A stretch of 64,000 nucleotides of DNA from positions 124,001-188,000 of IMG/VR virus record IMGVR_UViG_3300032322_002561; one strand, given 5' to 3'. The notes below the pieces were generated by a model. It saw only the letters and a list, made by a program, of their open reading frames with translations. It did no database searches and was not told the DNA's origin. Positions 1 to 60,786 of the stretch are shown here, in pieces. The position numbers and the translations under genes are program-made. Numbering within the stretch: position 1 is the stretch's first letter; each line of letters opens with the position of its first letter.

Positions 1-253
1 TCACTGTGGCATCTCCGTATTCTACACGATAATTTTCAACCTGTAGACTGGCCTGGCGATCCAACAGTTCATATCGTATTGTGTACTTACCGGGCCAGGC
101 TTCAATTTGAAAGCTCTCTTGCAGATAGACATTTTGCCAGGTCCAGGTGCGCTCGGTAAACAATTCGTCATCAACGAATGCACGGTACTGTGGCGGTGTC
201 ACAGTCCAGGCACAGTGTACATCGCAAACTATCTTGACGAACTTTTTTGTCAT
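1..253 (-). CDS. hypothetical phage protein, truncated at window edge (MTKKFVKIVCDVHCAW...)
   Basis: Open frame from ATG 253 to base 1, translated by hand (absent from track); TAAATA 5 nt upstream. Confidence 0.7.
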   Translation of the reverse strand, partial: MTKKFVKIVCDVHCAWTVTPPQYRAFVDDELFTERTWTWQNVYLQESFQIEAWPGKYTIRYELLDRQASLQVENYRVEYGDATV

Positions 254-291
254 AAACCTATTTATCATAATCTTAGCCTATAAATATGGCT

Positions 292-1344
292 ATGTTAAAG
301 CTGGCTGATATACGTCGAGTACACGTAGAACTTACAACTCGTTGCAATGCTCGCTGTCCCATGTGTCCTAGAAACTATCGAGGATTTGATTATAATTCTG
401 GATATCCTATAACCGAATTGAGTCTTGCACAATTCAGACACATTTTCCCCGCTAGTTTTCTTGAACAGTTGAGACCGCCACCGTTTCCCAACGATGGGTT
501 CGCGCACAAACACATGAAATTTTACGGTGTATTGTTCAACGGGAATCTAGGCGATTTTGCATTGGCCAAAGATGGTGTAGAAATCGTGGAATATCTAGTC
601 AGTCACGGAGTTCCGGTCAAAATCAGCACCAATGGCAGCATGCGATCTAGATCCTGGTGGAGTCGCCTGGCTCTACCAGATGTCACAATTGGATTTGCCT
701 TGGATGGCTTGGCAGACACGCACAATTTGTATAGACAGGACACTAACTGGCACACAGTCATTGACAATGCCATGGGTTTTATTGGCGCCGGTGGCCAAGC
801 CATATGGCGCTTTATTCCTTTTGAACACAACCAACATCAAGAACAACAATGTAAAGAACTAGCCAAAGAACTAGGCTTTGCAAAATTTGACAACATAGGT
901 GACGGTCGCAACAATTCTCCGGTGTTTACTAGAACTGGAGAATACAGTCATCAAATTGGACATGATCCTAGACCTGCAAATCATGTGCCCAATGTTCACG
1001 TCTTGCTGGACAATCATAAGTCTTGGTTCAATCATCGCACTATTCGAATTGAAAAAGACGAACCCAATCTGCGACTCATATGCGAGCACAAGCGACAAGA
1101 AGAAATATACGTGGCCGCAGACGGCAGTGTGTATCCTTGTTGTTTTTTAGGATACTATCCAGCCACTATGAATCACCCCGGTAACGAGCAGTTGAAAGAA
1201 ATGGTACATGAAAATAATGCCTTGCAATATGATTTGGCACACTGCATGAACTGGTTTGAAAAAATTGAACAATCATGGAAACAGGCCAGCATAGCTGAGG
1301 GAAGATTATATCAGTGTGTGAACACTTGTGGAGGACGATCTTGA
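292..1344 (+). CDS. radical SAM protein with C-terminal SPASM/twitch-like Cys cluster
   Basis: [13 protein letters not shown] (CxxxCxxC), [22 protein letters not shown]; second ATG (292) preferred because the late promoter overlaps ATG 286. Confidence 0.9.
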
Positions 1345-1952
1345 ATTTGCAGTTGCAGAGATTGTTCAGTTTGGCCTATACTCCTGAACAACAGGCTAGA
1401 GAGGACCGTGCCGCCAGTAGCATAGCACACACTCAAAAGTTGCGTGATGAATTACCCATGCTGTTTGCTCGGCACGGCATTGTGTCCATGTTTGATGCAG
1501 GCTGTAATGATTGTTCTTGGAGCAGTAGACTTGCCAACACAATTGAATATCATGGTGGTGATATCAGCCTGGCCATGGTGGCACGAGTTTGGCGCGAGCA
1601 TCCTGAACTTGATGTGGTCTTACATGACGTGACCACAGATGCCTTGCCCATGGTACATGTGTTGTTTGTGCGAGATGTAGCCATACATCTAAACAACCAA
1701 GACAAACTGCGCCTGTTACGTAACTGGTTGCTGAGTCAGATACCCTGGTTGATGATCACGCAGGACTATCATGAAACTTGCAATCGTGATTTTGACTATG
1801 ATAAAGTAGATTTTCCCTTGGGCTGGGTAAACTGGAGCCTGGATCCTTGGAATTTTCCTGAGCCCATGGATAGTATCTATGAATTCAATAACAATCAATC
1901 TGGTAGATGCATGGCTCTATGGCATCGTGATCAAATCCGGGGCATGCTATGA
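1341..1952 (+). CDS. class I SAM-dependent methyltransferase
   Basis: MFDAGCND motif I, YHGGDIS, RDVAIHL; probable TTG start overlapping upstream stop. Confidence 0.75.
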
Positions 1953-2824
1953 GTGTGGCTCGTGTGTTGTTTTTGGCTAGATATCGTGTGCCACATGCGT
2001 GTTTTGCTCTGCAGTGGGATCACAATCTTGTGGGCATTGATTATACCATAGTGGCCAGTCCGGTGCCCAAACAAGAATTGTGGCCAGTGTTTCACAAATA
2101 CGGTATTGATACCACACGCTTTGAATATGTTCCCGACAGTGTTATATTTGACAAATATCCCGAGGTTGATAACTGGGTATTTCCTGATGACTATCGTGGA
2201 TGGTGGTTGCGACAACAGGCCATAAAATTGAGCTTCCTGGATCACATACAAGAAGAAGTCATGCTCATGCATGATCCAGACACGTTCATGATTGAACCCT
2301 ATTGTTGCTATCGCAATGGCAAATTAAATTTGATGAGTTTAATGAATGTCACACAGGGCAGTTATGAAGGCGTGTTTGAAGCCATTACAGGATTCCCCAG
2401 ACAAACACCGCACTGTTTTGTGACGGAACTGGTTCCAGTTCGGCGCACCGACTGGGTCGCATTGCGAAATCATGTATGGAATCGTTGGCCTGACAAACAC
2501 TGGTTGGATGCCATTATTGATGCTGTACCAGGCATGCCCACAGTGCCACCCTGGGGTAACGGTAACATAATTAAATGGTTCAGCGAATACGAATTTTTAG
2601 GCAATTGGGCAGTGAAATCTGGACATGTGGAATACACTGCACAAAAAAGATTTGAATACGACAATCTAGAATTATTGTCCACACTTGATCCGCGGCAGTT
2701 CAATGCGGTGTGTGATGCAGTTCCAGACTTGAGTCGCAGCATGCAGTTTGACTGGAACACTCTCACAGTGATAGATTTTGATCGTTACAGACGCATGGTA
2801 GAAAAATGTTTAGGGCAAAACTAA
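1949..2824 (+). CDS. putative glycosyltransferase-like protein (paralog of 5213 and 11444)
   Basis: GWWLRQQAIKL, DPDT, FSEYE motifs shared with the other two. Confidence 0.55.
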   Translation: MSVARVLFLARYRVPHACFALQWDHNLVGIDYTIVASPVPKQELWPVFHKYGIDTTRFEYVPDSVIFDKYPEVDNWVFPDDYRGWWLRQQAIKLSFLDHIQEEVMLMHDPDTFMIEPYCCYRNGKLNLMSLMNVTQGSYEGVFEAITGFPRQTPHCFVTELVPVRRTDWVALRNHVWNRWPDKHWLDAIIDAVPGMPTVPPWGNGNIIKWFSEYEFLGNWAVKSGHVEYTAQKRFEYDNLELLSTLDPRQFNAVCDAVPDLSRSMQFDWNTLTVIDFDRYRRMVEKCLGQN

Positions 2825-3900
2825 AATTCAAACTCTGGGCCTATACACATGCTGTTAATTGTGCTGACGACTGGTTTATTGATCCAGACAGCGTAGGCAC
2901 ATACAACGAAGCCTTGTCTGCGGCTTTCAAAGTGGCGGCTGTGCCGGTCATGTTCAATCGATCTAATGATTTTTCATATCAACCCGGTAACGAACACATT
3001 GACATGAGCCAGTTTGATCTGGTACTGCTGAGCGACATAGAATATAGATCAATCGAATCCATAACCGATTGGGCCAACCAACACGGTATTCATAATTGGA
3101 TTTTGGCCACAGGCGGATATGATCTGAATACCCCATTTGATTATGATCGCTGGGTGTACCGAGCTTGGTGGATCTACAACAGAGATATTCCATTCAATCA
3201 ATATCAAGAAGTTCGTGACGGTAAAAAAACATTTGTGTGCGATGCTTTGTTGGGCAGTCGAAGACCCAATCGTGACTTTGTAATGTTGAGCATGCAAAAA
3301 CACAATCTGTTGCATCGTAATCTAGTGACTTATCGCGAAGTGTTTACTGGCAATCAAGTTACCGACGTGTCTATGTATGTAAAGCAACATTTTGATGGCA
3401 CAGAATTAAATTTTCCCTATGTGAGTCCCAATCTTGATCCAGCCTGGGAAGTCAGCGATGTGGTTCGCCATTCAGACAGTCAAACTGTACCCTGGGAAAT
3501 ATATCGTAGAAGCTGGATCAGTTTAGCTGTAGAAAGTGTCAGCTCAGGATCCACATTTTTCATGGCAGAAAAAATTTCCAAGCCCATGATGGCCGCTAGA
3601 CCATTTGTGGTATTTGGAATCAAGGGTTTTTTACACACACTACGAGTTTTGGGATTCAAGACATTTGAACCCTACATTGACGAAAGCTATGACATGATTG
3701 ACAATGATATTCTGCGTTGGGAAGCTGCTTTTGCTGAAATCCGTAGACTTCATGATGTAGATCTAGATAGACTTTACATGCACCTGGAAGAACGGCTCAC
3801 ACATAATTTTCGTTGGATCAAAACTCTAAAAGATCATGCCAATCACAATGTGGCCATGCTGTTGCGCAAACACATACACATCAGGTATTGGTTAAATTAA
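2806..3900 (+). CDS. putative glycosyltransferase-like phage protein
   Basis: C-terminal VES...EKISKP...PFVVFG...GFKTF...IDESYD resembles fucosyltransferase-like phage proteins. Confidence 0.5.
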   Translation: MFRAKLKFKLWAYTHAVNCADDWFIDPDSVGTYNEALSAAFKVAAVPVMFNRSNDFSYQPGNEHIDMSQFDLVLLSDIEYRSIESITDWANQHGIHNWILATGGYDLNTPFDYDRWVYRAWWIYNRDIPFNQYQEVRDGKKTFVCDALLGSRRPNRDFVMLSMQKHNLLHRNLVTYREVFTGNQVTDVSMYVKQHFDGTELNFPYVSPNLDPAWEVSDVVRHSDSQTVPWEIYRRSWISLAVESVSSGSTFFMAEKISKPMMAARPFVVFGIKGFLHTLRVLGFKTFEPYIDESYDMIDNDILRWEAAFAEIRRLHDVDLDRLYMHLEERLTHNFRWIKTLKDHANHNVAMLLRKHIHIRYWLN

Positions 3901-12328: not shown

Positions 12329-12504
12329 GATTTGACTTCTCTCACGTTGCTGACTATACTGTCAACGCCATATTGTGCTCTAAGCAGGCGTTTGGCCAAT
12401 TCATAATTGCGAGCAACCACCTGTGTGTCAATCAAGGTGGCACTGTTTTTAAGTTTGACTCTTGCATGAAAAGTCTTGAGATTTTCCAATTCTTTGACTT
12501 TCAT
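12325..12504 (-). CDS. small protein (MKVKELE...)
   Basis: ATGA overlaps with both neighbours; start at 12504 preferred. Confidence 0.65.
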   Translation of the reverse strand: MKVKELENLKTFHARVKLKNSATLIDTQVVARNYELAKRLLRAQYGVDSIVSNVREVKS

Positions 12505-15500
12505 TTCTTTTTGGATCTTCCTGACTTCATGTTGGCACACCAGTGATACATTTTGGCTTTCTCACCACTGGCATTTTTAGCTCGTTGACGTAGGCTTGTA
12601 ACTGAGCCATTGCAACTGGCCCCCGCACGTTTTACACGTCCAGGACGGCTCTTGCCTTTGACCTTGCCATCTGCAAAGTTTTCATTGACGTCATCACCTA
12701 GCTTGCGAGCCATTTGAATCTGCTGGGTCATGTTTTCTATGTCATGCTGATCAATGGCTTGCCCAATAGCGCTGCGAGATTTCAGCGAACGTACCACTGG
12801 CTCCACGGGTTCCACACGGTCCATGGATTTTTTCTTGATGACGGGTCTTGGTGGCACAGCACCTGCACCTGATACAGGATCTATGGCCTCGGCTACAATT
12901 CGGGTTCTAAGGAGTCCTGGTGGCATGCCCTCTTGTTCTTGTTGAGCTATCCAGGCACGCACTTCGTCAGCTGTGGCGTTACGCATGAAATGTATCACAC
13001 GGTCAGGATCATCATCCAGAACCAACTCGTAGTTCTGTCGCCGTGGCTCAAAGTTCTGTGCCACATCTGTGTTGACATCCTGCACACCCAGTCTGCGTTG
13101 TACGTCCACACTATCTCTTTGATCATCGGCGGCCTGCTGACCTTTTCTGTAGCCATAGTCAGCAGTGTCGTTGGGCAAGTCTTTCATCTTGAGCCACCGA
13201 TCAAACACACGACTGGCTTCCTGATCACTGTTGGCATGGAATCGGTCAACTACTCGCAAGTCTACAGTGCGTTGATCCACAATTTCATAGTTGTATTGAG
13301 TTGCTGTTGCGGGTTTCTTGACAATACGTTTGGCCACTTGTGCTCTGGGGCTGACTTTGGGCTCTGGCGTCTCATCAGGCCTGCGATATATGTTCCAGTC
13401 CAAGGACCGTTCTCCATATTCGTATTGGACCCGTTGCGTGGCTTTGTCAATGTCAGAAGCACGCATGGTCAGGAGCATTTTGCCCGTTGCATCAAACACA
13501 TCAAACCAGGGCTGTTTGATGCGCACATCAAGCTCATTAATGTCCCGACCGTATTGTCTCAAGAAAAGATCATAGGCTGAGTCATAGTCTTTAGCATACA
13601 GTGTGCCAACGATTCCGTCAGGGCTGTCTTTGTTGTCTCTGCGATAGACTTCGTATTCGTCTTTGCCTGTGCCAGGCAACTCTTTCTGTAGCACAGTATC
13701 AGCCCATTGTTTCTTTAACTGTTCTTTGTTGATGGTACCTGCTGAAAACTCCGAGAACAAGCGAAGTTGGTCCGCATATTGTTCGTTGTCTTGGGTAACC
13801 AACTTGTATAGTTTCTTGGCATACTCCTGGCGTTCGGCACTGGGATCACCGGCTATGGCCATGGCTCGGGCAAAACGCAACATGGTATTTTCTAATATGC
13901 CGATTTCTTCATCGCCTTTGGCCAACCAGTCGCCTCCGGGGCTACGGAATTCCACATAGCCATCTTGTAAATGTGCTGACGTATACTTGCTGGTGCCCAC
14001 ACCTTTTTGCAGTTCTCGGTAGGCCAACTCAGTGAGTCCATGACGCAACAATTCTACCACACCGGCTGGATCACTGCGTCCACCTTTGATGTTTTGTTTT
14101 AACTTGTCCAAGGCCGACGCACAATAGGTGTTAGCTGTACGACCAAACTGCTGTTGCACATACTTGTCGCCCATGAACAGGATCAACTTTACATAGTCTA
14201 TACCGACACTATCGTTGGCGTCTTCAGATTTGATCCGAGGCAAGCTCACGCCCATGTGCAGGCCTGTGGAACTATTGGTATAGGCGTTGCCACCGTTGGG
14301 ATCATTGGCCCAGTCTACCACTGCCTTTAATTTTTCTATGGCCATCAGCAAGGGCATGGGTGGGCTGACTATTTCAAGACCCATTTCTTCACTCTTGTCA
14401 TCGGGATCCAGGCTGCCATCGGGTTCTATGATCCAGGTGCCTTCTCTGCGTGCGGCACTGTGATAATTGGTGCTGACTTTGACAGGCATGTCCACTGCAT
14501 CTTGCAAGCTACTACCAATGTCGTCCCAATCACGGCTACCATTGTTGCTCTGGGCATCCATGTTCCACACAGGCCAGTCCAAGTTGTATTCGTTGGCAAT
14601 GTCACTCATCCAACGCAGTCCGACATCTGAAAAGAAGCTGTCACTGTCAGGACTATAGCTGTCACGGAAATCGTCCAGGGCCTGATCATAATAGCCGTCT
14701 TGTTTACGTATGCTGGTTTCTACTTCTTCGTCTAGGATGGCGTCGGCATCATCCACGGCTTCCATGTAAGTCCTGTAGTCAGGATTCTGTTCAGCAAAAG
14801 CTTCTTGTTCAGCTGAGGTCGTAAATTTGGGTGCGTCTGAACCCAGTCTAAATATCTTTTCGGCTTGATCGTCAGTGAGTTCCATGCCATCTGTTAGCAC
14901 GGCCAGTATACGCTCGCCCATGGGCACTTCGTCGAGATGCTGTTCACGCACTAGGTCTTCGGCTTCGTTGCCAAAATCTTCACGCACCCGCTCATCGTAC
15001 CAGTTCATGTAGGTTTCGTCTAAGTCGTTTTCCAGTCTGCTGACTCCGCGATCACTGAGTCCAAACCCATATTCATCGTTACTGAAAAACTCTATAACCT
15101 GCTGTATGCTGTAGGCACGCTCGTCGTAGTCGTAGTCGGGCTCAGGATCCATCTCATCACTTTCACCCTGTGTGTCACGGAATATGAGTTCAGCTTCAAA
15201 ACCAGCACGTATGCCCTTGGCTGCATCCGACGTGGCAAACTTTTCCAAGGCCGTGGGACTCATTTTGACTTCGTCAAGATCATCTTCATCTAGTTGTTTA
15301 CCTTGTGCTCGCGCTATGGCATCTTGCCCGGCAACAAAATCTTTTGCCGCAATGCCTTGGCCGGCTGACTGGCGTTGTTTGAGTCCTGGCAATAGTGGCA
15401 AGCCTTTTTTCTCGTGCGACTTCAGTTGTGCTTGCAATCGTTGTTGTAGAGCTGGTGTATCATAGAACAGGGCATCCACAGCATCTAGGATATAGACCCA

Positions 15501-17867
15501 GGGTGCGGCACTGTCGCTTTGTATGCTACGAGTGTCACCGGTCTGTAGATCCTGGATGTCCATGCTGTCTATGGCCAGTGGTCCAGCTACACCAGATCTG
15601 ATCATGTCTACTGGGCGCACCACAAAGTTGGCTGACTCACGACTGCGACGGTTTGTTAGCCGTACTTCATAGGTGGTGGGATTAATTTCGTCTACCAGTT
15701 CAGCACGCCATCCGTGTTGTGTTTCAGACTCGCCTTGTGCTGACTCGTCTACATGCCCATTCATGCCAAACTGATTGGCTGGAGCACGTTGATTGCGTGG
15801 GTCAATGTATTCATAGGGGTCGTCTTTGAACTGTGCCAGCTCTTGAGCCAGGCGTTCTTCCAGGGTGCTTTCGCGCAGGTTCACAGTTTTCATCAACAAG
15901 CCAGGTCGTCCTTGGCTGTCAGTTTTGAGTGCCATTTTGTTGGCTTGTCGACCAACTTCACCAGGCCGTATGTCTTGAGTCAAGGCCATGCTGTAGCGTG
16001 GATCTTTAGCCTGCTTTTTTGTGGGAATATATCCACTGGCATTCTCAGCCATTTTCCGTCTCATCTGTTGTGCCAGCTCATAATTTTGTAAAAATTCTAG
16101 TTCATTACGAGTCATTGGTTTATTGGCTACTTTTTTTGCTCTCAAAAATCGATAGTAGTCGTCTTTGTCTTTTTGACTTTGGTTGACGGCTATTTTTAGT
16201 TCTTCGTTTTGTTGGAACTGTTTGTCAAATTCTGCTTTTTTACGATAATATTCTTTTTTGTAGGCTTCAAAGTCAGCGGCCGCCTGTTCGGCACTTTGTG
16301 GTGGCACACGCGGTGCTGGTGGCAAAGTGCCCTGACGTTTTTGCATGCGATACAGCCAACTTTGATTTTGTGCATTGGCATCACCGCCCAGGGCGCGACT
16401 GTAGTTTATGATCTCTTGACGGAGATCTTCCTGAGCACCAGTCCAACCCATGCGTTTGAGTGTCTGTGCTGTGCGTGCCGCATCTACTGCACCACCAAGA
16501 GCTTGTCCTATTGTGCGATCTTGTGCTTGTGCACCACCGGCAGCCAGTGCAGCGGTCAAGGCACCGGCAGCCAACTTGCTTTTGATACCTTCGTCAACAC
16601 TTTCTTTTTCAAAGTATTCAGGGTAGGCATCGGTAAAGTCACGCATGATGATGCCGGCCACAGCATGTGCTTCGTTTTCCCAGTCACTGCCGGTTTCCCC
16701 GGCATCTGCAGGCAAGGGTTCAATTTCATGCTGGCGGCAGTGTGCCAGTTCATGTGCCGTGGTGCGCATGATGTCCAAGATATGTCGATTGGGCAGGCTC
16801 ACGTGCAAGGTATGTGTTTCAGGGTCAAATCTACCAAAGCTGGTGTTGCCTTCACTCCAGGCAGCATCAGAATGCAATTCTATCACAGGCAGTTTTTCAA
16901 TGCCCAGACGCTTGGCCACATAACGAACAAACCGTGATATGATTTTTTTGGTCAGTGGTGTTTCACTGAGAAACATTCTAGTTGATGGGCTGACCCCGTC
17001 CGGAGTAGAAGCTTCACGTATGTCCTGGCTCTCGCCACCACCGTCCCCTCCACCACCTTCTGAGCCGGCAGCATGATCTTGCCCAGCATAGCCAAAACCT
17101 GGATACCAGTAACCACCAAATGCACCGTAGCGAAACTTTTTCTTTTTGGCTTTCTTTCGGCGTTCGTTTAAGCTGAGTTCGCGATCCTTGAGTTCGTTGC
17201 GACGATCAAACAGGCGTTGGATATAGCTCTGACTGCGCAACATCTTGTAGGCCAAGTTTTCTGGACCAAATTCTCCGTTGGTTTCCAGTCCGGCCTTGCG
17301 CATCTGTTTGACTTTTTCTATGGTGGCTGTGACCTGTTCAAGGCTGTCACTCTCAATGGCCTGTTCAACTCTAGCACCAATGTCTTCGTACTTGTGTTGC
17401 ACGCTCATGTCGTCAATCTTGGCACGACGTCTTTTTGGCACTGAGATCCAGTCATCATTGAGCACGCTGTAGATGCCCTGACTCACGTGTGGTTGATCGG
17501 CATCTTGCACATACAGTTCCACATCATAGCCACCTATGCGAATGTCATGTTCATCGTTGTATTGATATTTTTTGGCATCAAACAGCTCGCGATAGACTTC
17601 GTCTTCGGGAACCTGCACCACTAGATGTAGATCAATGTCACTGTGTGGAGCATAACTGTAGGCGGCATTGCTGCCGCTGAGCGTGATGTCTTGGATTTGC
17701 AGATCGCTTACGCCAAGAAATTCTTGGAAATCTGCCGCAATTGCCAACAGTTTTTCACGCACTTCAGGAAGCAGTTTTTCGTCACTGCCAAAAATCCGTG
17801 GATTTAAGTTGTCGTGAAACTTTACAGCATCAGCAAGATTATAGGTCTGCAGCTCATGGATGTTCAT
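12501..17867 (-). CDS. 1788-aa polyvalent protein: Pol-beta-type nucleotidyltransferase, HExxH metallopeptidase, COOH-NH2 amidoligase and small modules
   Basis: GSNA...SDIDLH...VELYVQ; TTAHELAH...ENEA; GFEAEL...DGSL...LEIVSPP...STGLHMGVS...VEFRSPG. Confidence 0.8.
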   Translation of the reverse strand: MNIHELQTYNLADAVKFHDNLNPRIFGSDEKLLPEVREKLLAIAADFQEFLGVSDLQIQDITLSGSNAAYSYAPHSDIDLHLVVQVPEDEVYRELFDAKKYQYNDEHDIRIGGYDVELYVQDADQPHVSQGIYSVLNDDWISVPKRRRAKIDDMSVQHKYEDIGARVEQAIESDSLEQVTATIEKVKQMRKAGLETNGEFGPENLAYKMLRSQSYIQRLFDRRNELKDRELSLNERRKKAKKKKFRYGAFGGYWYPGFGYAGQDHAAGSEGGGGDGGGESQDIREASTPDGVSPSTRMFLSETPLTKKIISRFVRYVAKRLGIEKLPVIELHSDAAWSEGNTSFGRFDPETHTLHVSLPNRHILDIMRTTAHELAHCRQHEIEPLPADAGETGSDWENEAHAVAGIIMRDFTDAYPEYFEKESVDEGIKSKLAAGALTAALAAGGAQAQDRTIGQALGGAVDAARTAQTLKRMGWTGAQEDLRQEIINYSRALGGDANAQNQSWLYRMQKRQGTLPPAPRVPPQSAEQAAADFEAYKKEYYRKKAEFDKQFQQNEELKIAVNQSQKDKDDYYRFLRAKKVANKPMTRNELEFLQNYELAQQMRRKMAENASGYIPTKKQAKDPRYSMALTQDIRPGEVGRQANKMALKTDSQGRPGLLMKTVNLRESTLEERLAQELAQFKDDPYEYIDPRNQRAPANQFGMNGHVDESAQGESETQHGWRAELVDEINPTTYEVRLTNRRSRESANFVVRPVDMIRSGVAGPLAIDSMDIQDLQTGDTRSIQSDSAAPWVYILDAVDALFYDTPALQQRLQAQLKSHEKKGLPLLPGLKQRQSAGQGIAAKDFVAGQDAIARAQGKQLDEDDLDEVKMSPTALEKFATSDAAKGIRAGFEAELIFRDTQGESDEMDPEPDYDYDERAYSIQQVIEFFSNDEYGFGLSDRGVSRLENDLDETYMNWYDERVREDFGNEAEDLVREQHLDEVPMGERILAVLTDGMELTDDQAEKIFRLGSDAPKFTTSAEQEAFAEQNPDYRTYMEAVDDADAILDEEVETSIRKQDGYYDQALDDFRDSYSPDSDSFFSDVGLRWMSDIANEYNLDWPVWNMDAQSNNGSRDWDDIGSSLQDAVDMPVKVSTNYHSAARREGTWIIEPDGSLDPDDKSEEMGLEIVSPPMPLLMAIEKLKAVVDWANDPNGGNAYTNSSTGLHMGVSLPRIKSEDANDSVGIDYVKLILFMGDKYVQQQFGRTANTYCASALDKLKQNIKGGRSDPAGVVELLRHGLTELAYRELQKGVGTSKYTSAHLQDGYVEFRSPGGDWLAKGDEEIGILENTMLRFARAMAIAGDPSAERQEYAKKLYKLVTQDNEQYADQLRLFSEFSAGTINKEQLKKQWADTVLQKELPGTGKDEYEVYRRDNKDSPDGIVGTLYAKDYDSAYDLFLRQYGRDINELDVRIKQPWFDVFDATGKMLLTMRASDIDKATQRVQYEYGERSLDWNIYRRPDETPEPKVSPRAQVAKRIVKKPATATQYNYEIVDQRTVDLRVVDRFHANSDQEASRVFDRWLKMKDLPNDTADYGYRKGQQAADDQRDSVDVQRRLGVQDVNTDVAQNFEPRRQNYELVLDDDPDRVIHFMRNATADEVRAWIAQQEQEGMPPGLLRTRIVAEAIDPVSGAGAVPPRPVIKKKSMDRVEPVEPVVRSLKSRSAIGQAIDQHDIENMTQQIQMARKLGDDVNENFADGKVKGKSRPGRVKRAGASCNGSVTSLRQRAKNASGEKAKMYHWCANMKSGRSKKK

Positions 17868-17882
17868 AAGCTGTATTTACCG

Positions 17883-18799: not shown

Positions 18800-19798
18800 T
18801 TATTTTTTACGACCAGCGCAGTGCGCTTTTTGGCTAAAGCCCCTGGGGTTGTTGCAGTTGATTGAACGCTTGTATTTGGCAGACCACTTTTCGTCTATGT
18901 AGTCATCGCTCTCATTGTATGTGGCGGCCCAGCCTTGATTTTCGTCCATTTCTTTTTGTTTTTTAGCCACGTAATTTGTGATACGGCTCTTGGTCACACT
19001 GTGCTGTGCTTTTGTGGGATTGGCATAATTGCCTGGTTTGGAGTAAACCAGCTTATCGCCGCGATATATTTCTACTCGATCAGGATGATATTTGATAGTG
19101 TACCCTTGATACGCAAAAGATTTCACATCGTAGGTAGAAGTTGACACTGGTCGAGTCATGGTTTTTTTCTGTTTGGCCACTGCTTCGGGATTGGAGGGGA
19201 ATGATTCTTCCATGCCCAATATAGCAGTGTCTAGTAACTTTACTACATTTTGTGCCAATGCAGGATTCTTTTGTGTGATGGGGTACAGGCTCATGACAAG
19301 AGCCTGTTTGCGTCGGTCATTTAATCGAGGCCATGCCGCACGTATTTCTGTAGCCGAAGTCATACCAGGACCAAATTCCACAGTGGGCAAATAGGCCATA
19401 TAAGCATGTTGAGCAAATGGTGCTAGATCCTGTTGTCCTTTGTAGGGCTGTAGATAACTGGGCGATCCATCTTTTTTGACGCCACCTGCTTGTGGCGGTT
19501 TGTCAGCATCTTTTTCACTGCGCACAAAGATCAACTGATCGGTTTCAGGGTCAAATCCAGCAGTGATTTCCTTGGCTTGGAACGGGCTTTTGACTTGTAC
19601 AAAATGGCCGGGTTCAACACCGGCCAACTTGGCCAGCTTTTCTTTTACAGCAAATGGAAAAGGTCGTGCTGACGTATCATTTGTGGCTGCCACAAACACT
19701 TCAGCATTGGGGAACGCTTTGCGTGCAGAGTTATACAGGGCATAATGACCTGCATGAAAAGGATGGAACCCACCGGGCATAACGACAATTTGCTTCAT
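18800..19798 (-). CDS. HIGH-family nucleotidyltransferase with C-terminal small modules
   Basis: PGGFHPFHAGH, SATEIR; C-terminal IDE/KWSAKYKRSINCNNP...C. Confidence 0.75.
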   Translation of the reverse strand: MKQIVVMPGGFHPFHAGHYALYNSARKAFPNAEVFVAATNDTSARPFPFAVKEKLAKLAGVEPGHFVQVKSPFQAKEITAGFDPETDQLIFVRSEKDADKPPQAGGVKKDGSPSYLQPYKGQQDLAPFAQHAYMAYLPTVEFGPGMTSATEIRAAWPRLNDRRKQALVMSLYPITQKNPALAQNVVKLLDTAILGMEESFPSNPEAVAKQKKTMTRPVSTSTYDVKSFAYQGYTIKYHPDRVEIYRGDKLVYSKPGNYANPTKAQHSVTKSRITNYVAKKQKEMDENQGWAATYNESDDYIDEKWSAKYKRSINCNNPRGFSQKAHCAGRKK

Positions 19799-19804
19799 AC
19801 CCAG

Positions 19805-19810
19805 TATTTA
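19805..19810 (-). promoter_or_regulatory. T4-like late promoter TAAATA, example of a leaderless class
   Basis: TAAATA or variant 4-7 nt before ATG at 10 or more genes. Confidence 0.8.
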
Positions 19811-20188: not shown

Positions 20189-20352
20189 TTTGCTGATTCT
20201 ACTTCCACAATCACACCAGAACCGGCTAATTCTTCTGCGACCTGACCCAAAGCTGTCACAACTTCTGCTGTGGCAATGGGCGCAGGATTGTCAGAATCTT
20301 TAACCAATTTACTGAGTTTGATCACTACTACTTCTTCATGTATTTTTGCCAT
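20185..20352 (-). CDS. 55-aa protein MAKIHEEVVVIKLSKLVKD...VEVESAK
   Basis: Translated by hand; TATAAATA 7 nt upstream; ATGA overlap with next gene. Confidence 0.75.
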   Translation of the reverse strand: MAKIHEEVVVIKLSKLVKDSDNPAPIATAEVVTALGQVAEELAGSGVIVEVESAK

Positions 20353-40732: not shown

Positions 40733-40968
40733 TCTATTTTGATTTTGCTGTCAAAGTCTATGTTGCCAGGATTTTGCTTGCGATAAGATTCTGACAGTTT
40801 TTCCTGGTACTTGTTTTTAAAAGTTTCTATGGCCATTTGTAACTGATTTATCAGCTGACCGTTTCCGGTGTTATAAGCTATGTTGAGTTTTTTGGTTAGG
40901 TCGTTGATTTTATCTGACAGTTCATCAATAGTCAGCTGATCAATACTGCCAATCAAAGGATGTTCCAT
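40729..40968 (-). CDS. small coiled-coil protein
   Basis: TTGACA-17-TAAAAT promoter 6 nt upstream of ATG. Confidence 0.7.
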   Translation of the reverse strand: MEHPLIGSIDQLTIDELSDKINDLTKKLNIAYNTGNGQLINQLQMAIETFKNKYQEKLSESYRKQNPGNIDFDSKIKIE

Positions 40969-41012
40969 GTTGTTATTTTATAGAATCCAAACGGATTTGT
41001 CAAGAGATTTGA

Positions 41013-50654: not shown

Positions 50655-50685
50655 TATTTACCAAAACTTAGTAGACCGCTAAATA
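50655..50685. promoter_or_regulatory. back-to-back late promoters of divergent tail genes
   Basis: TATTTA 50655-50660 (minus) and TAAATA 50680-50685 (plus), each followed by SD and ATG. Confidence 0.7.
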
Positions 50686-54091: not shown

Positions 54092-54411
54092 ACACTGAAA
54101 CTGCTTCCGCATCCGCATGTGGTTGTGGCTTGAGGATTTTTTATACTGAAAGCGGCACCGTATTGATCTTCTTTATAATCAATTTCAGCACCTTGCAAAT
54201 ACTGGCTGCTCATGCCGTCAACTAGGACATTTACTCCGCCTACGTCTAGATCAAAGTCGTCTTCGTTAGTGATTTCGTCTAGAGTAAAGCCATACTGAAA
54301 TCCTGAGCAACCACCACCTTGTACAAACACACGCAATTTCAAAGCAGGATTTTGTTCTTCGGCCAAGATGTCTCGCAGTTTGGCCACTGCTGATTCACTT
54401 ACTGTTATCAT
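54088..54411 (-). CDS. erpA: Fe-S cluster insertion protein ErpA/IscA
   Basis: [24 protein letters not shown]. Confidence 0.93.
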
Positions 54412-54962
54412 AATCTTTCGTTGCAAACATTCCAGTCAATAATTTTCCAGATGTTATCGAGATATTTTTCTTTGTCTGATTGATAATCCAGGGCCCAGGC
54501 ATGTTCCCACCAGTCCACTAACACACATATATCTGTTCTTACCGCATGGTTGGCTATGGTTTTGATGGTACCAGCAGTGCTCAAGTAAACCCACCCAGAA
54601 CCTTGGATCTTCATTGCTTCTGTTTTAAACGCTTCCTTGAAATCTTCCCAGGTTTTGAAGTTGCTTTCAATGAGTTCTAGCACAGCACCTCGAGGACGAT
54701 TGGCACCTCGCGGTGGTTGCAGTTGTGGAAAAAACTTGTTGTGTAAAAAACTGCCAGCACGATTGAAGTTTGCGTTGCCTTCGCCAGCATTGTATCTTTT
54801 TGCATAGCCCCGAGCCAGGTGTTCATAGTGATAGTCTATGGTTTCCTTGCTCATCACAGGATGCAAGTCACCAGGACCATAGGGCAAGGGCGTGGTTTCC
54901 AACTTGGCTGGACGTGTGCTGGCTTCTAATAGTTCTAGATCTTTGCGGATGTCGTGTTGCAT
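54408..54962 (-). CDS. Fe/Mn superoxide dismutase with N-terminal extension
   Basis: PLPY..L.P.MS.ET..YH, GSGW, DWWEHAW.LDY. Confidence 0.9.
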
Positions 54963-54970
54963 CTTGATAT

Positions 54971-55189
54971 TTACCTACGGCGTGTGACCCTGCCACGGGT
55001 GAGATCATATGGACTGAATTCTATTTCAACGCGATCTCCCAGGAGTATTTTGATGTTGTGCTGTCGCATCTTGCCAGAAATCACACCAGTTACCAAGGTA
55101 TCACTCACATCTAATTTGATTCTAAACATGGCATTGGGCAAAACATCTACCACAGTGCCTTCCATTTTGAAACCTTCTTCTTTGGCCAT
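54971..55189 (-). CDS. infA: translation initiation factor IF-1
   Basis: MAKEE...LPNAMFR...[22 protein letters not shown]. Confidence 0.97.
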
Positions 55190-55192: not shown

Positions 55193-56173
55193 CTAGTTCA
55201 ACCAGTCGCCAATGATCTGCATGGTGGTAACATTTGTGGTATCAAACAACACGGATTTTTTGTTGTTGCTGTAGAAGCAGGTAAAGTTGTTGTCCACCCA
55301 GGGCATCAAGAGTTCTAGATTGACCGGATCTTTGACATCAAACAACCACAAATACAAGTCGGTTCGTTTGACCGGGCTGTCGCTTTTTCTATAGGCGCCC
55401 ACCAAGCGTCCGTAGTTCCACTCCCACTCACCAGTTTTTTCTGTCACAACATTGCAATGAAACAGTTCACTGGGCTGTATCAGTTTGGCCACGTCTTCGG
55501 TGCAGTGAACTTCAAGGCTGATTTTTCCGTAGTTTTTGATATTCTTTTGCCAGAAATTATGCACAGTTACACCAGCATTGATGTGTGGCAAGGCCTGATC
55601 TTGTTTGTCGTAAATGGTGTGTCTGATCACACTGCGACAAAATTTTGGCAGGCTTTGTTCACGTTCTTCCAGACTGATTTCATAGTCAAGATTAGTGAGA
55701 TGAAACATGGCGTCAAATTCTTGTGTGCTGGAAATACGTTGACACGAATGCAACAAAGGCATGCTGTGTCCCTTGGGTACCAACAACACCAGACTACCAA
55801 GAGCCAGACCACTGCAGGCAAGAGCCGCAAATCTGGTTGCACCTGCACCAAGCTCAAGTTCACCTGCCGAGTTCAAGGTAGCAAACAAAGGCAACAGAAA
55901 CTCTTCGTGTTGGCGTGTCTGACAGAGATGTTGAACAAAACCCAGATGTTTGTAGTCGGTATTCATGTAGGCCTGTTTTATGGCCTGGATTGTTTGATTG
56001 CGCCAGCGCAGATTCAAGTCATGATCAAGATGCCGACACACATAGAGATCACCCAGTGTCAGACAGTATTCAACCCAACCAAACTGTGCGCCATCAACTT
56101 CGGTGCTGAGAGTCTTGCCTTCTTGACTGTCAGAACGATAGCTGATTTTGGTTTTTATGCTAGTATTATTCAT
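55193..56173 (-). CDS. hypothetical protein
   Basis: 326-aa ORF in operon order. Confidence 0.65.
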   Translation of the reverse strand: MNNTSIKTKISYRSDSQEGKTLSTEVDGAQFGWVEYCLTLGDLYVCRHLDHDLNLRWRNQTIQAIKQAYMNTDYKHLGFVQHLCQTRQHEEFLLPLFATLNSAGELELGAGATRFAALACSGLALGSLVLLVPKGHSMPLLHSCQRISSTQEFDAMFHLTNLDYEISLEEREQSLPKFCRSVIRHTIYDKQDQALPHINAGVTVHNFWQKNIKNYGKISLEVHCTEDVAKLIQPSELFHCNVVTEKTGEWEWNYGRLVGAYRKSDSPVKRTDLYLWLFDVKDPVNLELLMPWVDNNFTCFYSNNKKSVLFDTTNVTTMQIIGDWLN

Positions 56174-56177
56174 GTTG

Positions 56178-56705
56178 TTATTTAATCAGTCTCCAGCCTA
56201 GGTCTGCAACAGTTTGCCATAGCAGGGTGTCATTTTTAACATCTACAGGTTCAAGCCCAGTTAAATCCTGTTTGAGCACACAGTCACAGTTTATGTAAAA
56301 CTCTTCCGTGGTGCGTTGGCGCACAATATTGGTCAAACCCATGGGCCTGGTATGCAAACACATTTGCCAACTCAAGCCCACCACTAACCAATGCTGTATA
56401 TTCCAGACCTTGTTGTATTCAAAAAAACGCACAGGATCAGTCACATCAGCAATCAAGCACTGGCGTGCCACCAAGTGGTCACGCAGAACCGGACTGAGTG
56501 GGCCAAAATCATACATGGCACTACCATAGCATGCGCTTACAGCTATGTCAAACTTGAATTTTTCCAGCACCGGCAACATGTTACGACAGAATCTATCTAG
56601 ATGGGGATTGTAATCATTTGAGGGCCAACAGTCAATCATGATTAGTCCGCGTATGTCAGGACAGGGTTCTTGATATTGTTGTAGTAGACTGGGAAGTGTA
56701 AGCAT
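56178..56705 (-). CDS. isochorismatase-family cysteine hydrolase-like protein
   Basis: IMIDCW (catalytic Asp-like) and VVGLSWQMCL (Cys-nucleophile-like). Confidence 0.5.
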   Translation of the reverse strand: MLTLPSLLQQYQEPCPDIRGLIMIDCWPSNDYNPHLDRFCRNMLPVLEKFKFDIAVSACYGSAMYDFGPLSPVLRDHLVARQCLIADVTDPVRFFEYNKVWNIQHWLVVGLSWQMCLHTRPMGLTNIVRQRTTEEFYINCDCVLKQDLTGLEPVDVKNDTLLWQTVADLGWRLIK

Positions 56706-60042: not shown

Positions 60043-60227
60043 TACTTGGCGCTCAAGGCTTCTTTTTCTGCTGTGATTTCTTTGCGTCGCTCTTTGATGG
60101 CTTTGGACATTTCTTGCAGGGCTTTTCTAGCGCGAGCAGCAGATGCTTTAACGCCTTTGCCTGTGAACTTGTCATTTTCGGCGATGTAGGTTTCGAATGC
60201 GGTTTTGATTGCTTCATGATTGGTCAT
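60042..60227 (-). CDS. histone H1-like/Hc1-type small basic protein
   Basis: KF..KGVKASAARARKAL.E....KE.RK. Confidence 0.65.
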   Translation of the reverse strand: MTNHEAIKTAFETYIAENDKFTGKGVKASAARARKALQEMSKAIKERRKEITAEKEALSAK

Positions 60228-60289
60228 TTTTGTTCCTTGATTAAATGTGCAGAATGCACTTTGTAATTATACGGCAAAAGTGCAGGGTG

Positions 60290-60553
60290 TCAAATATTAA
60301 TATGCCGTTTTAGCCAAGGATCCCAAACTGCCAGATTGTCCCAACCATGAGTCCAGGTCACAATAAACAAACTTAAAGTATTGTGATCAAATATGTGCAT
60401 GCGGTTGTCCTCCACTCTTGCAGATATAGATTTGCTGGTTTGGGTCCATCGGATCAGGCGATCACGGGCTGAGCTGTCTCGGTAAATCACTGTGAAAAGA
60501 GGTTGTTCGCTTCTGTAAGTTGATAAGGTCATGCTAGTGTATGGTTTGATCAC
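60290..60553 (-). CDS. hypothetical protein
   Basis: ORF in operon. Confidence 0.6.
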   Translation of the reverse strand: MIKPYTSMTLSTYRSEQPLFTVIYRDSSARDRLIRWTQTSKSISARVEDNRMHIFDHNTLSLFIVTWTHGWDNLAVWDPWLKRHINI

Positions 60554-60770
60554 TGCTCCTTGGTTCAGTGATCTCGTTTACATACTTAGCAAACTTGTCG
60601 TCCAAAATGACCATTTCATCGTCGTGCTCGGCAGCACGGTCGGGGTCTACACCCATGACACGCATGAGACCGCCCACGTGTACTTCGGTGATGCCATGAT
60701 GATACAACACCATCATGAGCTCGTACATGAGCACACGAACTTCTTGTTCCAATTTTGGATCGTCTAGCAT
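60534..60770 (-). CDS. hypothetical protein
   Basis: TAAATT 5 nt upstream of ATG. Confidence 0.7.
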   Translation of the reverse strand: MLDDPKLEQEVRVLMYELMMVLYHHGITEVHVGGLMRVMGVDPDRAAEHDDEMVILDDKFAKYVNEITEPRSSDQTIH

Positions 60771-60786
60771 ACTATAATTTATGCTT

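What the first reader, a model, noticed from the sequence alone, without database searches (positions are those of the whole stretch)
253..60781. Leaderless late genes throughout the window, alongside a phage-encoded IF-1
Seen: TAAATA (or TAAATT/TAAGTA) lies 4-7 nt upstream of the ATG with no room for an SD at starts 253, 292, 17867, 19798, 20352, 32460, 34453, 35373, 54962 and 60770. Two sigma70-type -10 boxes are 6 nt from the ATG (36594, 40968). Established: T4 late promoters (TATAAATA) start transcription a few nt downstream, and leaderless mRNAs use 70S initiation that is sensitive to initiation-factor balance. Inference: an 11-13-bp promoter+ATG unit makes genes portable cassettes and could keep late translation independent of anti-SD pairing. 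The phage infA (54971-55189) may tune this.
Basis: partly seen in the sequence, partly recalled or inferred. Interest (0 to 1): 0.62.

Follow-up and report, generated by a model that had tools for sequence, protein, structure and literature searches.

The report
Late promoters fused to start codons
In this uncultured giant phage and its relatives, a six-base late-promoter box (TAAATA) sits 4-7 bases before the ATG of about 7% of genes, so these messages probably start at or within three bases of their start codon; the link to the phage's own initiation factor IF-1 is untested.

Summary
All 12 sites exist, and two more were missed (ATG 28453 and 56173). The window is part of a 236-kb IMG/VR jumbo-phage record.

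- **Distance to ATG:** pooled with two complete relatives (344 and 337 kb), the TAAATA-to-ATG distance is bimodal. Spacers 4-7 give 72 gene starts, only one with an SD-like word. Spacers 10-16 form a trough. Spacers 17-26 give 73 starts, 53 with an SD-like word.
- **Specificity:** one-mismatch variants are flat, as are T4 and PA5oct.
- **Promoter identity:** the genome encodes a gp55-family late sigma. T4 geometry puts +1 on the A of ATG at spacer 5.
- **Start-site signature:** the base before the ATG is a pyrimidine in 76/82 such genes, against 227/490 SD-led genes.
- **Conservation:** orthologues keep the arrangement.
- **Early genes:** full sigma70-type promoters abut ATG at exactly 6 nt (36594, 40968), also conserved.

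The most likely reading is leaderless or near-leaderless mRNAs from T4-type late promoters. No transcript data could be obtained.

infA is a real, clade-conserved IF-1, but its link to leaderless translation is speculative. Most genes keep an SD, so late translation is not SD-independent. I rate this a new variant of known kinds: T4 late promoters, and the leaderless late genes of Thermus phage phiYS40.

The parts
259..264 (-). TAAATA late-promoter core, 5 nt before ATG 253. The gene (93 aa) runs off the window start.
   Evidence: Orthologues in G1 and G2 keep TAAATA at spacer 4. It forms a back-to-back pair with 281-286; the two ATGs are 38 nt apart.
281..1344 (+). TAAATA (281-286) 5 nt before ATG 292, followed by a radical-SAM/SPASM gene (292-1344, 350 aa).
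   Evidence: The CxxxCxxC motif starts at residue 18. Orthologues have spacer 4 and 5.
12501..17879 (-). TAAATA (17874-17879) 6 nt before ATG 17867, followed by a 1788-aa gene with amidoligase and nucleotidyltransferase-like domains.
   Evidence: G1 and G2 orthologues have TAAATA at spacer 5.
18800..19810 (-). TAAATA (19805-19810) 6 nt before ATG 19798, followed by a cytidylyltransferase-like gene (332 aa).
   Evidence: The N-terminal GxFxPxHxGH motif lies at residues 9-18, so the start is right. Orthologues have spacer 7.
20185..20365 (-). TAAATA (20360-20365) 7 nt before ATG 20352, followed by a 55-aa gene. There is an A at position 5 after the box, so a 3-nt leader is possible.
   Evidence: Orthologues in G1 and G2 also have spacer 7.
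27866..28464 (-). TAAATA (28459-28464) 5 nt before ATG 28453, followed by a HAD-type phosphatase gene (195 aa).
   Evidence: The DxDxT motif lies at residues 15-19. A related G2 gene at 130798 (249 aa) has the same box and spacing and shares the first three codons; the best tblastn match in G2 is a paralogue at 146212 without the box.
33887..34464 (-). TAAATA (34459-34464) 5 nt before ATG 34453, followed by a virion structural protein gene (188 aa).
   Evidence: (phrog_12928, 1.4e-28). Orthologues have spacer 5.
54408..54973 (-). TAAATA (54968-54973) 5 nt before ATG 54962, followed by an Fe/Mn superoxide dismutase gene (184 aa). The TAA of the box is the stop codon of infA.
   Evidence: JGI's own gene call uses the same ATG. 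G1 and G2 orthologues have spacer 5.
54971..55189 (-). infA, a full-length translation initiation factor IF-1 (72 aa). Its ATG lies 3 nt after the stop of the upstream 326-aa gene, so translation is probably coupled.
   Evidence: PF01176, 7e-19. End-to-end match to solved bacterial IF-1 structures, 6.6e-23. Present in G001, G002 and G003. Sequence context.
55193..56184 (-). TAAATA (56179-56184) 5 nt before ATG 56173, followed by a 326-aa gene of unknown function that heads the infA operon.
   Evidence: The JGI gene call uses the same start.
31783..32471 (-). TAAATT variant (32466-32471) 5 nt before ATG 32460, followed by a 225-aa gene. The promoter class is uncertain.
   Evidence: TAAATT is not enriched as a class. 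Orthologues carry TATAAT or TATATA-like boxes at the same place.
35363..36005 (+). TAAGTA variant (35363-35368) 4 nt before ATG 35373, followed by a 210-aa gene. Weakest case.
   Evidence: TAAGTA is mildly enriched. No orthologue was found in G1 or G2.
60534..60781 (-). TAAATT variant (60776-60781) 5 nt before ATG 60770, followed by a 78-aa gene.
   Evidence: Orthologues carry TAAGTA 6-7 nt before the ATG.
35995..36629 (-). Sigma70-type promoter TTGACC-N17-TATAAT (36601-36629) ending 6 nt before ATG 36594, followed by a 199-aa gene.
   Evidence: G1 and G2 orthologues keep TTGAC(A/C)-N17-TATAAT-N6-ATG.
40729..41003 (-). Sigma70-type promoter TTGACA-N17-TAAAAT (40975-41003) ending 6 nt before ATG 40968, followed by a 79-aa gene.
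   Evidence: G1 and G2 orthologues keep TTGACT-N17-TACAAT-N6-ATG.
31124..31779 (-). Leadered late promoter: TAAATA (31774-31779) 23 nt before the endolysin ATG 31750, with an AAAGGA SD in between.
   Evidence: (phrog_181, 2e-77).
50655..50685 (.). Two divergent leadered late promoters. TAAATA 50655-50660 (-) lies 20 nt before ATG 50634 of the 937-aa tail-fibre-like gene. TAAATA 50680-50685 (+) lies 19 nt before ATG 50705 of the 676-aa tail-fibre gene.

Best explanation
TAAATA is the -10-like core of late promoters. They are read by host RNA polymerase carrying the phage's own gp55-family sigma factor (encoded at G000:7983-8891, outside the window).

The promoters come in two forms:
- **Leadered form (about half of those next to a gene start).** The box lies 17-26 nt before the ATG, and a Shine-Dalgarno sequence sits in a very short leader.
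- **Leaderless form (the other half, about 7% of all genes).** The box lies 4-7 nt before the ATG. Transcription then starts on the A of the ATG (spacers 4-5) or up to 3 nt before it (spacers 6-7). The mRNA has no ribosome-binding site and must be translated by the leaderless route, that is, recognition of a 5'-terminal AUG.

A second, smaller set of genes uses complete sigma70-type promoters placed exactly 6 nt from the ATG, which gives leaderless mRNAs from the unmodified host polymerase.

What is shown: the sequence anatomy, the statistics, the conservation across relatives and the presence of the sigma factor. What is inferred: the transcription start sites, the late timing and the mode of translation.
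For: 1. **Cognate factor.** T4 gp55 matches one ORF (E 2e-7). That ORF scores 9.6e-75 against phrog_12791 'sigma factor for late transcription'. The gp55 DNA-pocket residues N13, F86, Y97 and T99 are conserved.
2. **Geometry.** In the T4 open complex, the adenines at -12, -9 and -8 enter gp55 pockets. TATAAATA therefore spans -13 to -6, and TAAATA-N5-ATG puts +1 on the A.
3. **Bimodal spacing in three genomes**. Spacers 4/5/6/7 give 20/30/8/14 gene starts, 1 with an SD-like word. Spacers 10-16 give 1-2 each. Spacers 17-26 give 73 starts, 53 with an SD-like word. The 18 one-mismatch variants are flat.
4. **Start-site signature.** The base before the ATG is a pyrimidine in 76/82 such genes against 227/490 SD-led genes (P 7e-17). 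In the spacer-7 class, position 5 after the box is A in 12/14.
5. **No alternative SD-led start** within 30 codons: 8/82 against 597/1051 (P 1e-17). Only ATG occurs at this distance; no GTG or TTG is among the frequent triplets there.
6. **Correct starts.** Catalytic motifs begin 8-25 residues after these ATGs. JGI's gene calls agree for three of the genes.
7. **No -35 or upstream conservation** (at most 0.16 bit), as in T4.
8. **Late-type genes follow the box.** These include gp25-like baseplate wedge, virion proteins, tail fibres and endolysin.
9. **Conservation.** Orthologues in genomes of 40.5% and 46.2% G+C keep box and distance while the spacer letters change. Ten relatives were scanned against the reversed pattern: five with TAAATA-N5-ATG, all with more matches than the control, and five with N{4,7}, four of them with more.
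10. **Own promoter required.** 21 of 82 sites have a divergent upstream neighbour, so they cannot be served by read-through or coupling.
11. **Negative controls.** With the same script, T4 gives 0 at spacers 4-7 with a mode at 28, and PA5oct is flat.
Against: - There is no transcript evidence. No RNA run holding this sequence was listed, and the clade has no cultured member in the phage collection.
- gp33 and gp45 homologues were not found by sequence. The record is only about 68% complete and these proteins diverge fast.
- The T4 positions -13 and -12 are not conserved here, so recognition differs from T4 in detail.
- Spacer 6 is oddly rare relative to 5 and 7.
- For spacers 6-7, the exact 5' end (0 to 3 nt of leader) cannot be told from sequence.
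- The late sigma gene itself, dnaK and a ligase also carry the box. 'Late' may therefore be 'middle and late'.
Confidence: 0.78

Rival explanations
1. TAAATA next to the ATG is a translation signal rather than a promoter. It would act as an A/U-rich, non-SD ribosome-loading or enhancer element on longer read-through transcripts.
For: The box is A/U-rich and sits where an SD would sit. 61 of 82 sites have a co-directional upstream gene, and in 27 of them that gene ends within 15 nt of the ATG.
Against: - The same hexamer lies 17-26 nt upstream of SD-bearing starts, with a trough in between.
- One-mismatch A/U-rich variants such as TAAAAA, AAAATA and TAAATT are not enriched.
- The box matches the promoter of a sigma factor that the phage encodes.
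- There is a pyrimidine/purine start-site signature.
- Complete -35/-10 sigma70 promoters abut ATG in the same way.
- 21 of 82 sites face a divergent gene.
Confidence: 0.06
2. The genes are translated by termination-reinitiation, or by 70S scanning from the upstream gene. On this view the TAA inside TAAATA is simply that gene's stop codon.
For: The infA stop is the TAA of the SOD box. One third of sites have the upstream gene ending within 15 nt. A review describes IF1 as strongly stimulatory for 70S scanning.
Against: - Other TAA-containing hexamers (TAAATT, TAAAAA, TAAACA, TAAAGA, TAAATC, TAAATG) show no enrichment.
- Many sites are divergent or more than 60 nt from the upstream gene.
- Coupling may add to expression at some sites, but it does not explain the motif.
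Confidence: 0.06
3. TAAATA marks an RNA-processing site. An endonuclease would cut there to produce AUG-proximal 5' ends from long transcripts.
For: A/U-rich single-stranded sites are typical targets of RNase E-type enzymes (general knowledge). A review lists a 5' phosphate as enhancing leaderless translation.
Against: - There is no evidence for such an enzyme or such specificity.
- A promoter explains the sigma factor, the lack of -35, the T4-like geometry and the divergent pairs.
Confidence: 0.04
4. The pattern is chance or an artefact of start-codon calling.
For: My gene calls are crude. Some sites have an alternative upstream ATG (268 versus 253, 286 versus 292).
Against: - The histograms do not depend on gene calls.
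- The pattern recurs in twelve genomes: G000, G1 and G2 in the script histograms and nine of the ten relatives in the pattern scans.
- Orthologue N-termini and JGI calls agree with these starts.
- T4 and PA5oct controls are flat.
Confidence: 0.01

Closest known systems
Bacteriophage T4 late promoters (TATAAATA at -13 to -6, read by gp55 with gp33 and the gp45 clamp)
   Same: A gp55-family sigma is encoded. The promoter is a -10-like A/T box with no -35 element, upstream of structural and lysis genes. The distance from the box to the predicted +1 is the same.
   Different: The core is 6 bp; -13 and -12 are not conserved. Half of the gene-proximal boxes abut the ATG. In T4, none of 32 TATAAATA lies 4-7 nt from a gene start, and the modal distance is 28 nt. 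gp33 and gp45 were not identified. The sigma is 302 aa, with about 125 extra residues.
Thermus thermophilus phage phiYS40: leaderless middle and late transcripts, with an IF2/IF3 shift
   Same: It is a large phage whose middle and late mRNAs mostly lack leaders. The proposal is that the balance of initiation factors favours their translation (review PMC3594737).
   Different: phiYS40 uses host-type extended -10 promoters in a Deinococcus-Thermus host, where leaderless genes are common. It changes host IF2 and IF3 levels (this from the review; the promoter class from my memory of Sevostyanova et al. 2007, which could not be opened). Here the promoters are gp55-type, only about 7% of genes are affected, and the factor in question is a phage-encoded IF-1.
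'TA-led' or '-10 region adjacent to the ORF' leaderless genes of Actinobacteria and Deinococcus-Thermus
   Same: A -10-like signal lies about 10 bp upstream of the start codon, with no SD. This is taken as the genomic mark of leaderless genes (PMC3160421; PMC12340547). The sigma70-type cases at 36594 and 40968 are exactly of this kind.
   Different: Those are cellular genes read by the housekeeping sigma. Here most cases use a phage-specific late box. The host is unknown.
IF-1 genes of very large phages (Lak phages, huge-phage records LR756511 and LR756508, Sinorhizobium phage Phosso, Bacteroides DAC/SJC phages)
   Same: A full-length infA homologue sits in a phage genome.
   Different: Identity is only 40-55%. 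Phosso shares the sigma family but shows no TAAATA-ATG pattern. None of these has a described link to leaderless mRNAs, as far as my searches went.
Cultured relatives by sigma factor: Pseudomonas phage PA5oct, Agrobacterium phage Atu_ph07, and Asteriusvirus (121Q/RaK2-like) phages
   Same: Same sigma family (39-42% identity), with synteny to the gp47/gp46-like nuclease genes in those phages.
   Different: TAAATA-N4-7-ATG is not enriched over the reversed control. The PA5oct histogram is flat. The published PA5oct promoters are TTGAC/TATAATA types (PMC7318152).

Membership tests
T4-type late transcription system | A gp55-family late sigma factor is encoded. | tested here: met
   T4 gp55 against the genome gives E 2e-7. 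phrog_12791 9.6e-75 and phrog_234 7.9e-24. Pocket residues N13, F86, Y97 and T99 are conserved; H95 is F.
T4-type late transcription system | An 8-bp TATAAATA box at -13 to -6. | tested here: inconclusive
   The six 3' bases (TAAATA) are highly specific. The positions equivalent to -13 and -12 are not conserved. Only 7 exact TATAAATA occur in the genome, no more than the reversed control.
T4-type late transcription system | No conserved -35 element. | tested here: met
   Information content is at most 0.16 bit at every position from -51 to -12 in 72 aligned sites.
T4-type late transcription system | The gp33 co-activator and the gp45 sliding clamp are present. | tested here: inconclusive
   No significant match to T4 gp45 or gp33. 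A gp44-like clamp loader is present (window 37691-38614, phrog_168, 2e-75). The record is only 68% complete.
T4-type late transcription system | The box precedes structural and lysis (late) genes. | tested here: met
   Endolysin, tail fibres, virion structural proteins and gp25-like baseplate wedge. Many auxiliary genes also carry it.
Leaderless (TA-led) genes | A -10-like signal about 10 bp before the start codon, and no SD. | tested here: met
Leaderless (TA-led) genes | The transcript 5' end lies at, or within a few nt of, the start codon. | not testable with these tools
   No RNA run was listed. Indirect support comes from the pyrimidine at -1, the A at position 5-6 after the box and T4 geometry.
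Leaderless (TA-led) genes | AUG start codon. | tested here: met
   72 ATG at spacers 4-7, and no GTG or TTG among the frequent triplets there.
Bacterial IF-1 (PF01176, S1-like OB fold) | A full-length match to the family and to solved IF-1 structures. | tested here: met
   PF01176 7e-19, residues 8-71 of 72. PDB 2n78_A 6.6e-23, aligned 1-71.
Sigma70-type promoters (sites 36594 and 40968) | TTGACA-like and TATAAT-like hexamers 17 bp apart. | tested here: met
   11 of 12 matches each, the top score (shared by five sites) in the tool's scan. Conserved in G1 and G2.

The most novel reading that the evidence does not exclude
This clade of abundant uncultured jumbo phages, about 340 kb each, carries its own initiation module: a conserved IF-1, and in at least two genomes an initiator-type tRNA-Met. 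The module would bias ribosomes towards 5'-terminal-AUG (70S-type) initiation. A defined regulon of leaderless early and late genes would then keep being translated, or be translated only from its own promoters, while SD-dependent host translation is shut down or attacked. The 14-bp promoter-plus-ATG unit would also act as a timing lock, because the same ATG inside a read-through transcript has no ribosome-binding site.
Probability: 0.12. Interest if true: 0.8.

Novelty: new variant of a known kind. Interest (0 to 1): 0.52.

Why it matters
If the predicted start sites are right, this is a family-wide and evolutionarily maintained use of leaderless mRNAs from T4-type late promoters. T4 and PA5oct clearly lack this. 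In pattern scans, Atu_ph07, an Asteriusvirus and Phosso show no enrichment either.

It would show that a 6-bp box plus an ATG is enough to express a gene in these phages. That matters for annotating metagenomic giant phages, where gene callers expect an SD. It also matters for understanding how auxiliary genes are wired into the late programme.

It also gives a concrete set of genes on which to test whether phage-encoded IF-1, and a phage initiator tRNA, act on leaderless initiation. The role of translation genes in huge phages is still an open question.

Tried and rejected
- **Megablast of 12 kb against the phage collection:** no match. The clade has no close sequenced isolate.
- **Pfam Gp23 in the genome:** nothing found, and the control was silent too, so this is uninformative.
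- **RNA evidence:** no RNA run holding the sequence was listed.
- **T4 gp45 and gp33 searches:** nothing significant. The 256-aa gene next to the clamp loader gave only a sub-threshold GDSL-lipase hit, so it is not shown to be a clamp.
- **Host inference from IF-1:** the best bacterial matches are 63-68% identical and mostly Desulfobulbales.
- **TAAATT as a promoter variant:** rejected as a class (1.5% against 17.6%).
- **IF-1 as a marker of the leaderless pattern across phages:** Phosso has infA but shows 8 pattern matches against 6 in the control. No association can be claimed from the few cases available.
- **Literature:** searches for a described link between gp55-type promoters and leaderless mRNAs found none. 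The phiYS40 primary paper could not be opened.
- **Portable cassettes:** the leaderless genes keep the same order in three genomes. Examples are the 55-aa gene, the nucleotidyltransferase and the 1788-aa gene, and also infA with SOD. Nothing points to mobility.

Full report
**What the window is.** The window is bases 124,001-188,000 of a 236,309-bp IMG/VR virus record, estimated 68% complete. It has about 45% G+C. No close relative exists among 50,697 deposited phage genomes.

The genome encodes a 302-aa homologue of the T4 late sigma factor gp55:
- T4 gp55 finds it at E 2e-7.
- It scores 9.6e-75 against phrog_12791 'sigma factor for late transcription'.

Its nearest cultured relatives, at 39-42% identity, are Pseudomonas phage PA5oct, Agrobacterium phage Atu_ph07, Sinorhizobium phage Phosso and the Asteriusvirus (121Q/RaK2-like) phages. 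At least 577 IMG/VR contigs encode a relative of this sigma; the 80 best are 77-85% identical. They include two complete genomes with terminal repeats, G001 (344 kb) and G002 (337 kb). I fetched both in full as comparators, called G1 and G2 below.

**Checking the observation.**
- TAAATA lies 5 nt before the ATG at 253, 292, 34453 and 54962.
- It lies 6 nt before the ATG at 17867 and 19798, and 7 nt before it at 20352.
- TAAATT lies 5 nt before 32460 and 60770. TAAGTA lies 4 nt before 35373.
- 36594 and 40968 are preceded by complete sigma70-type promoters, TTGACC or TTGACA, then 17 bp, then TATAAT or TAAAAT, then 6 nt. These are two of the five sites with the top score, 11 of 12, in the tool's own scan of that region.

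**Is it more than chance?**
- In the genome, 12 ATGs lie exactly 5 nt after a TAAATA. All 12 open ORFs of at least 40 aa. Neighbouring spacers hold 0-5.
- TAAATA at spacer 5 is the single most enriched hexamer/position combination upstream of crudely called gene starts, ahead of every Shine-Dalgarno (SD) hexamer.
- Over the three genomes, 81 of 459 TAAATA (17.6%) lie 4-7 nt before an ATG that opens an ORF of at least 60 aa. The 18 one-mismatch variants give 0.7-2.4%. TAAGTA reaches 5.4% and TAAATT 1.5%.
- The pooled distance distribution is bimodal. Spacers 4/5/6/7 hold 20/30/8/14 gene starts, 1 with an SD-like word. Spacers 10-16 hold 1-2 each. Spacers 17-26 hold 73 starts, 53 with an SD-like word. 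The one-mismatch control is flat.
- With the same script, T4 has no TATAAATA at 4-7 nt from a gene start, with a mode at 28 nt. PA5oct is flat.
- Pattern counts in Atu_ph07, an Asteriusvirus, T4 and Phosso do not exceed the reversed control.
- Ten relatives were scanned against the reversed pattern. Five were scanned with TAAATA-N5-ATG and all exceed the control. Five were scanned with TAAATA-N{4,7}-ATG and four exceed it.

**Why TAAATA is a promoter.**
- The cognate factor is encoded. Its residues matching the gp55 DNA pockets are largely kept: N13, F86, Y97 and T99, with H95 replaced by F (read).
- Nothing is conserved upstream of the box. Information content is at most 0.16 bit from -51 to -12. 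This matches T4 late promoters, which have no -35 element (PMC2988020).
- The box precedes late-type genes through short SD-bearing leaders:
  - endolysin at 31750;
  - both tail-fibre genes at 50634 and 50705;
  - virion structural proteins.
- It precedes a gp25-like baseplate wedge gene and a virion protein directly.
- The hexamer is 6-8-fold over-represented in the 6-7% of the genome that is intergenic. It is rarer overall than most of its variants.

**Why the mRNAs should be leaderless.** In the T4 open complex, the adenines at -12, -9 and -8 enter gp55 pockets (PMC7892883). This fixes TATAAATA at -13 to -6. TAAATA followed by five bases and ATG then puts +1 on the A. Four independent sequence features agree with that.
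1. The base before the ATG is a pyrimidine in 76 of 82 such genes, against 227 of 490 SD-led genes (P 7e-17). This is the usual pyrimidine(-1)/purine(+1) preference of start sites.
2. In the spacer-7 class, position 5 after the box is A in 12 of 14. Positions 5-7 are A-rich at the leadered promoters. Initiation therefore seems to occur 5-6 nt after the box. That gives a true 5'-terminal AUG at spacers 4-5 (50 of 72 sites) and a leader of up to 3 nt at spacers 6-7.
3. Only ATG is used at this distance.
4. These genes have no SD-bearing alternative start within 30 codons: 8 of 82, against 597 of 1051 for other genes (P 1e-17).

The ATGs are the real starts:
- Catalytic motifs begin within 8-25 residues. 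These are the nucleotidyltransferase HxGH, the metallophosphatase DxH, the HAD DxDxT and the radical-SAM CxxxCxxC motifs.
- In-frame stops lie a few codons upstream.
- Orthologues align from residue 1.
- JGI's gene calls use the same ATGs for the 326-aa gene, infA and SOD.

The trough between the two modes is what one expects if the box fixes the 5' end. A leader of 5-11 nt is too long for 5'-terminal AUG recognition and too short to hold an SD.

**Conservation.** Orthologues in G1 (40.5% G+C) and G2 (46.2%) keep the box and a 4-7-nt distance while the letters between change. This holds for the following genes:
- SOD;
- the 1788-aa gene;
- the radical-SAM gene;
- the 93-aa and 55-aa genes;
- the nucleotidyltransferase;
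- the virion protein;
- the gp25-like gene;
- two metallophosphatases;
- the CHASE2 cyclase.

Both sigma70-type cases keep -35, 17 bp, -10, exactly 6 nt, then ATG in all three genomes. TATAAT shows its own peak at spacer 6 in each genome.

About 7% of genes are late-leaderless: 20 of 285, 33 of 446 and 29 of 402. A further 3-6% are candidates for the sigma70 type.

21 of 82 sites face a divergent neighbour, so read-through or translational coupling cannot serve them. The pair at 253/292 has only 38 nt between its two ATGs. A similar pair of different genes occurs in G1.

**The rivals.**
- A translational enhancer or a stop-codon/reinitiation effect fails, because other A/U-rich or TAA-containing hexamers are not enriched and because of the divergent sites.
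- An RNA-processing site cannot be excluded without 5'-end chemistry, but it explains none of the promoter-like features.
- Chance and gene-calling artefacts are excluded by the call-independent histograms and the controls.

**The IF-1 part.** The gene at 54971-55189 is a full-length IF-1 (PF01176 7e-19; solved bacterial IF-1 structures 6.6e-23 end to end).
- Its ATG lies 3 nt after the stop of the 326-aa gene, which is itself headed by a leaderless late unit at 56173.
- Its TAA stop is the first half of the SOD promoter box.
- infA is present in all three relatives that are at least 89% complete. It was not found in the two relatives that are 66-72% complete.
- It is next to SOD in G2 and about 1 kb from it in G1, and it has diverged to 52-57% identity.
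- Phage infA genes are rare but known: Lak phages, two huge-phage records, Phosso and some Bacteroides phages.
- A review states that IF1 and IF2 stimulate leaderless translation in vitro, and that IF1 strongly stimulates 70S scanning (PMC9031893).
- Against a specific link: Phosso has infA without the motif pattern. The sigma70-type leaderless genes also imply that host ribosomes translate such mRNAs in any case.

I therefore treat the link as an untested hypothesis.

The claim that late translation becomes independent of anti-SD pairing is not supported, since most genes keep an SD. The portability idea is not supported either, because gene order around the leaderless units is conserved.

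**Comparison with what is known.**
- **Nearest mechanistic precedent:** Thermus phage phiYS40. Its middle and late mRNAs are mostly leaderless, and its infection is reported to raise IF2 and lower IF3 (PMC3594737).
- **Genomic signature:** a -10-like signal next to the ORF is an accepted mark of leaderless genes in bacteria (PMC3160421; PMC12340547).
- **What is new:**
  - a gp55-type late box fused to the start codon;
  - its maintenance across a large uncultured jumbo-phage clade;
  - its clear absence from T4 and PA5oct, with no enrichment in pattern scans of three other cultured relatives;
  - the co-occurrence with a conserved phage IF-1.

My literature searches found no description of this. 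I rate it a new variant of a known kind.

**Limits.** No transcript data could be obtained. The host is unknown. gp33 and gp45 were not identified. My gene calls are home-made. Exact 5' ends at spacers 6-7 are inferred only.

Noticed in passing
G000:88016-88089 (-), outside the window; also G1:331282-331355: A phage tRNA-Met(CAT) with the determinants of a bacterial initiator tRNA: a C1xA72 mismatch, G2:C71, C3:G70 and A73. The GGG:CCC run in the anticodon stem is incomplete or shifted. No such tRNA was found in G2. A review says that extra initiator tRNA strongly enhances leaderless translation, so this may belong with IF-1.
   Followed up: partly
G000:90377-90819 (-), outside the window; also in G1 and G2: A phage-encoded permuted tmRNA (Rfam tmRNA_permuted, 107.7 bits, with a partial alpha_tmRNA match). 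The tag is ANAANDEVFALAA, and ANASNDETFALAA in G2. It sits beside a cluster of 11 tRNAs at 82-91.5 kb. It is a possible clue to the host lineage.
   Followed up: partly
window 54088-56184 (-): A compact late operon: a 326-aa gene of unknown function, then infA, then Fe/Mn SOD, then an IscA-like Fe-S assembly gene (PF01521). The last overlaps the SOD stop by 4 nt. The stop of one gene, a promoter and the next start are packed into 14 nt.
   Followed up: partly
window 251-294; G1:141242/141281: Back-to-back late promoter pairs with only 38 nt between the two divergent ATGs. The two polymerase footprints must overlap. The same layout recurs in G1 with different genes.
   Followed up: no
three genomes, pooled: Spacer 6 is under-used (8 sites) compared with spacers 5 (30) and 7 (14). 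The spacer-7 class keeps an A at position 5 after the box. I have no firm explanation for the dip at 6.
   Followed up: partly
G000:7983-8891 (-), outside the window: The late sigma gene itself carries TAAATA 20 nt upstream, followed by an AGGAG SD. This suggests positive autoregulation. The protein has about 125 residues inserted between the gp55-like N-terminal segment and the sigma region 2 core.
   Followed up: no
window 21039-23315 (-) and 12501-17867 (-): A ClpA/ClpB-like AAA+ ATPase (phrog_4871, 2.6e-238; about 40% identical to those of Atu_ph07 and Phosso). Also a 1788-aa protein with amidoligase and nucleotidyltransferase-like domains, expressed from a leaderless late unit.
   Followed up: no
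G000 outside the window: 223240-225144 (-), 208239-208682 (+), 212926-214941 (-), 214969-215319 (+), 206406-207116 (-), 20304-35501 (+): A rich auxiliary gene set, mostly behind TAAATA boxes: DnaK (PF00012, 1.9e-260), a CsgF-like curli protein, a CHASE2-adenylate cyclase, SAM decarboxylase and a fatty-acid desaturase. There is also a 5065-aa giant ORF.
   Followed up: no
whole genome and relatives: TAAATA is rarer (459 in three genomes) than most of its one-mismatch variants (for example TAAATT 880 and AAAATA 1166). 35-51% of copies lie in the 6-7% of sequence that is intergenic. This looks like selection against stray late promoters.
   Followed up: partly
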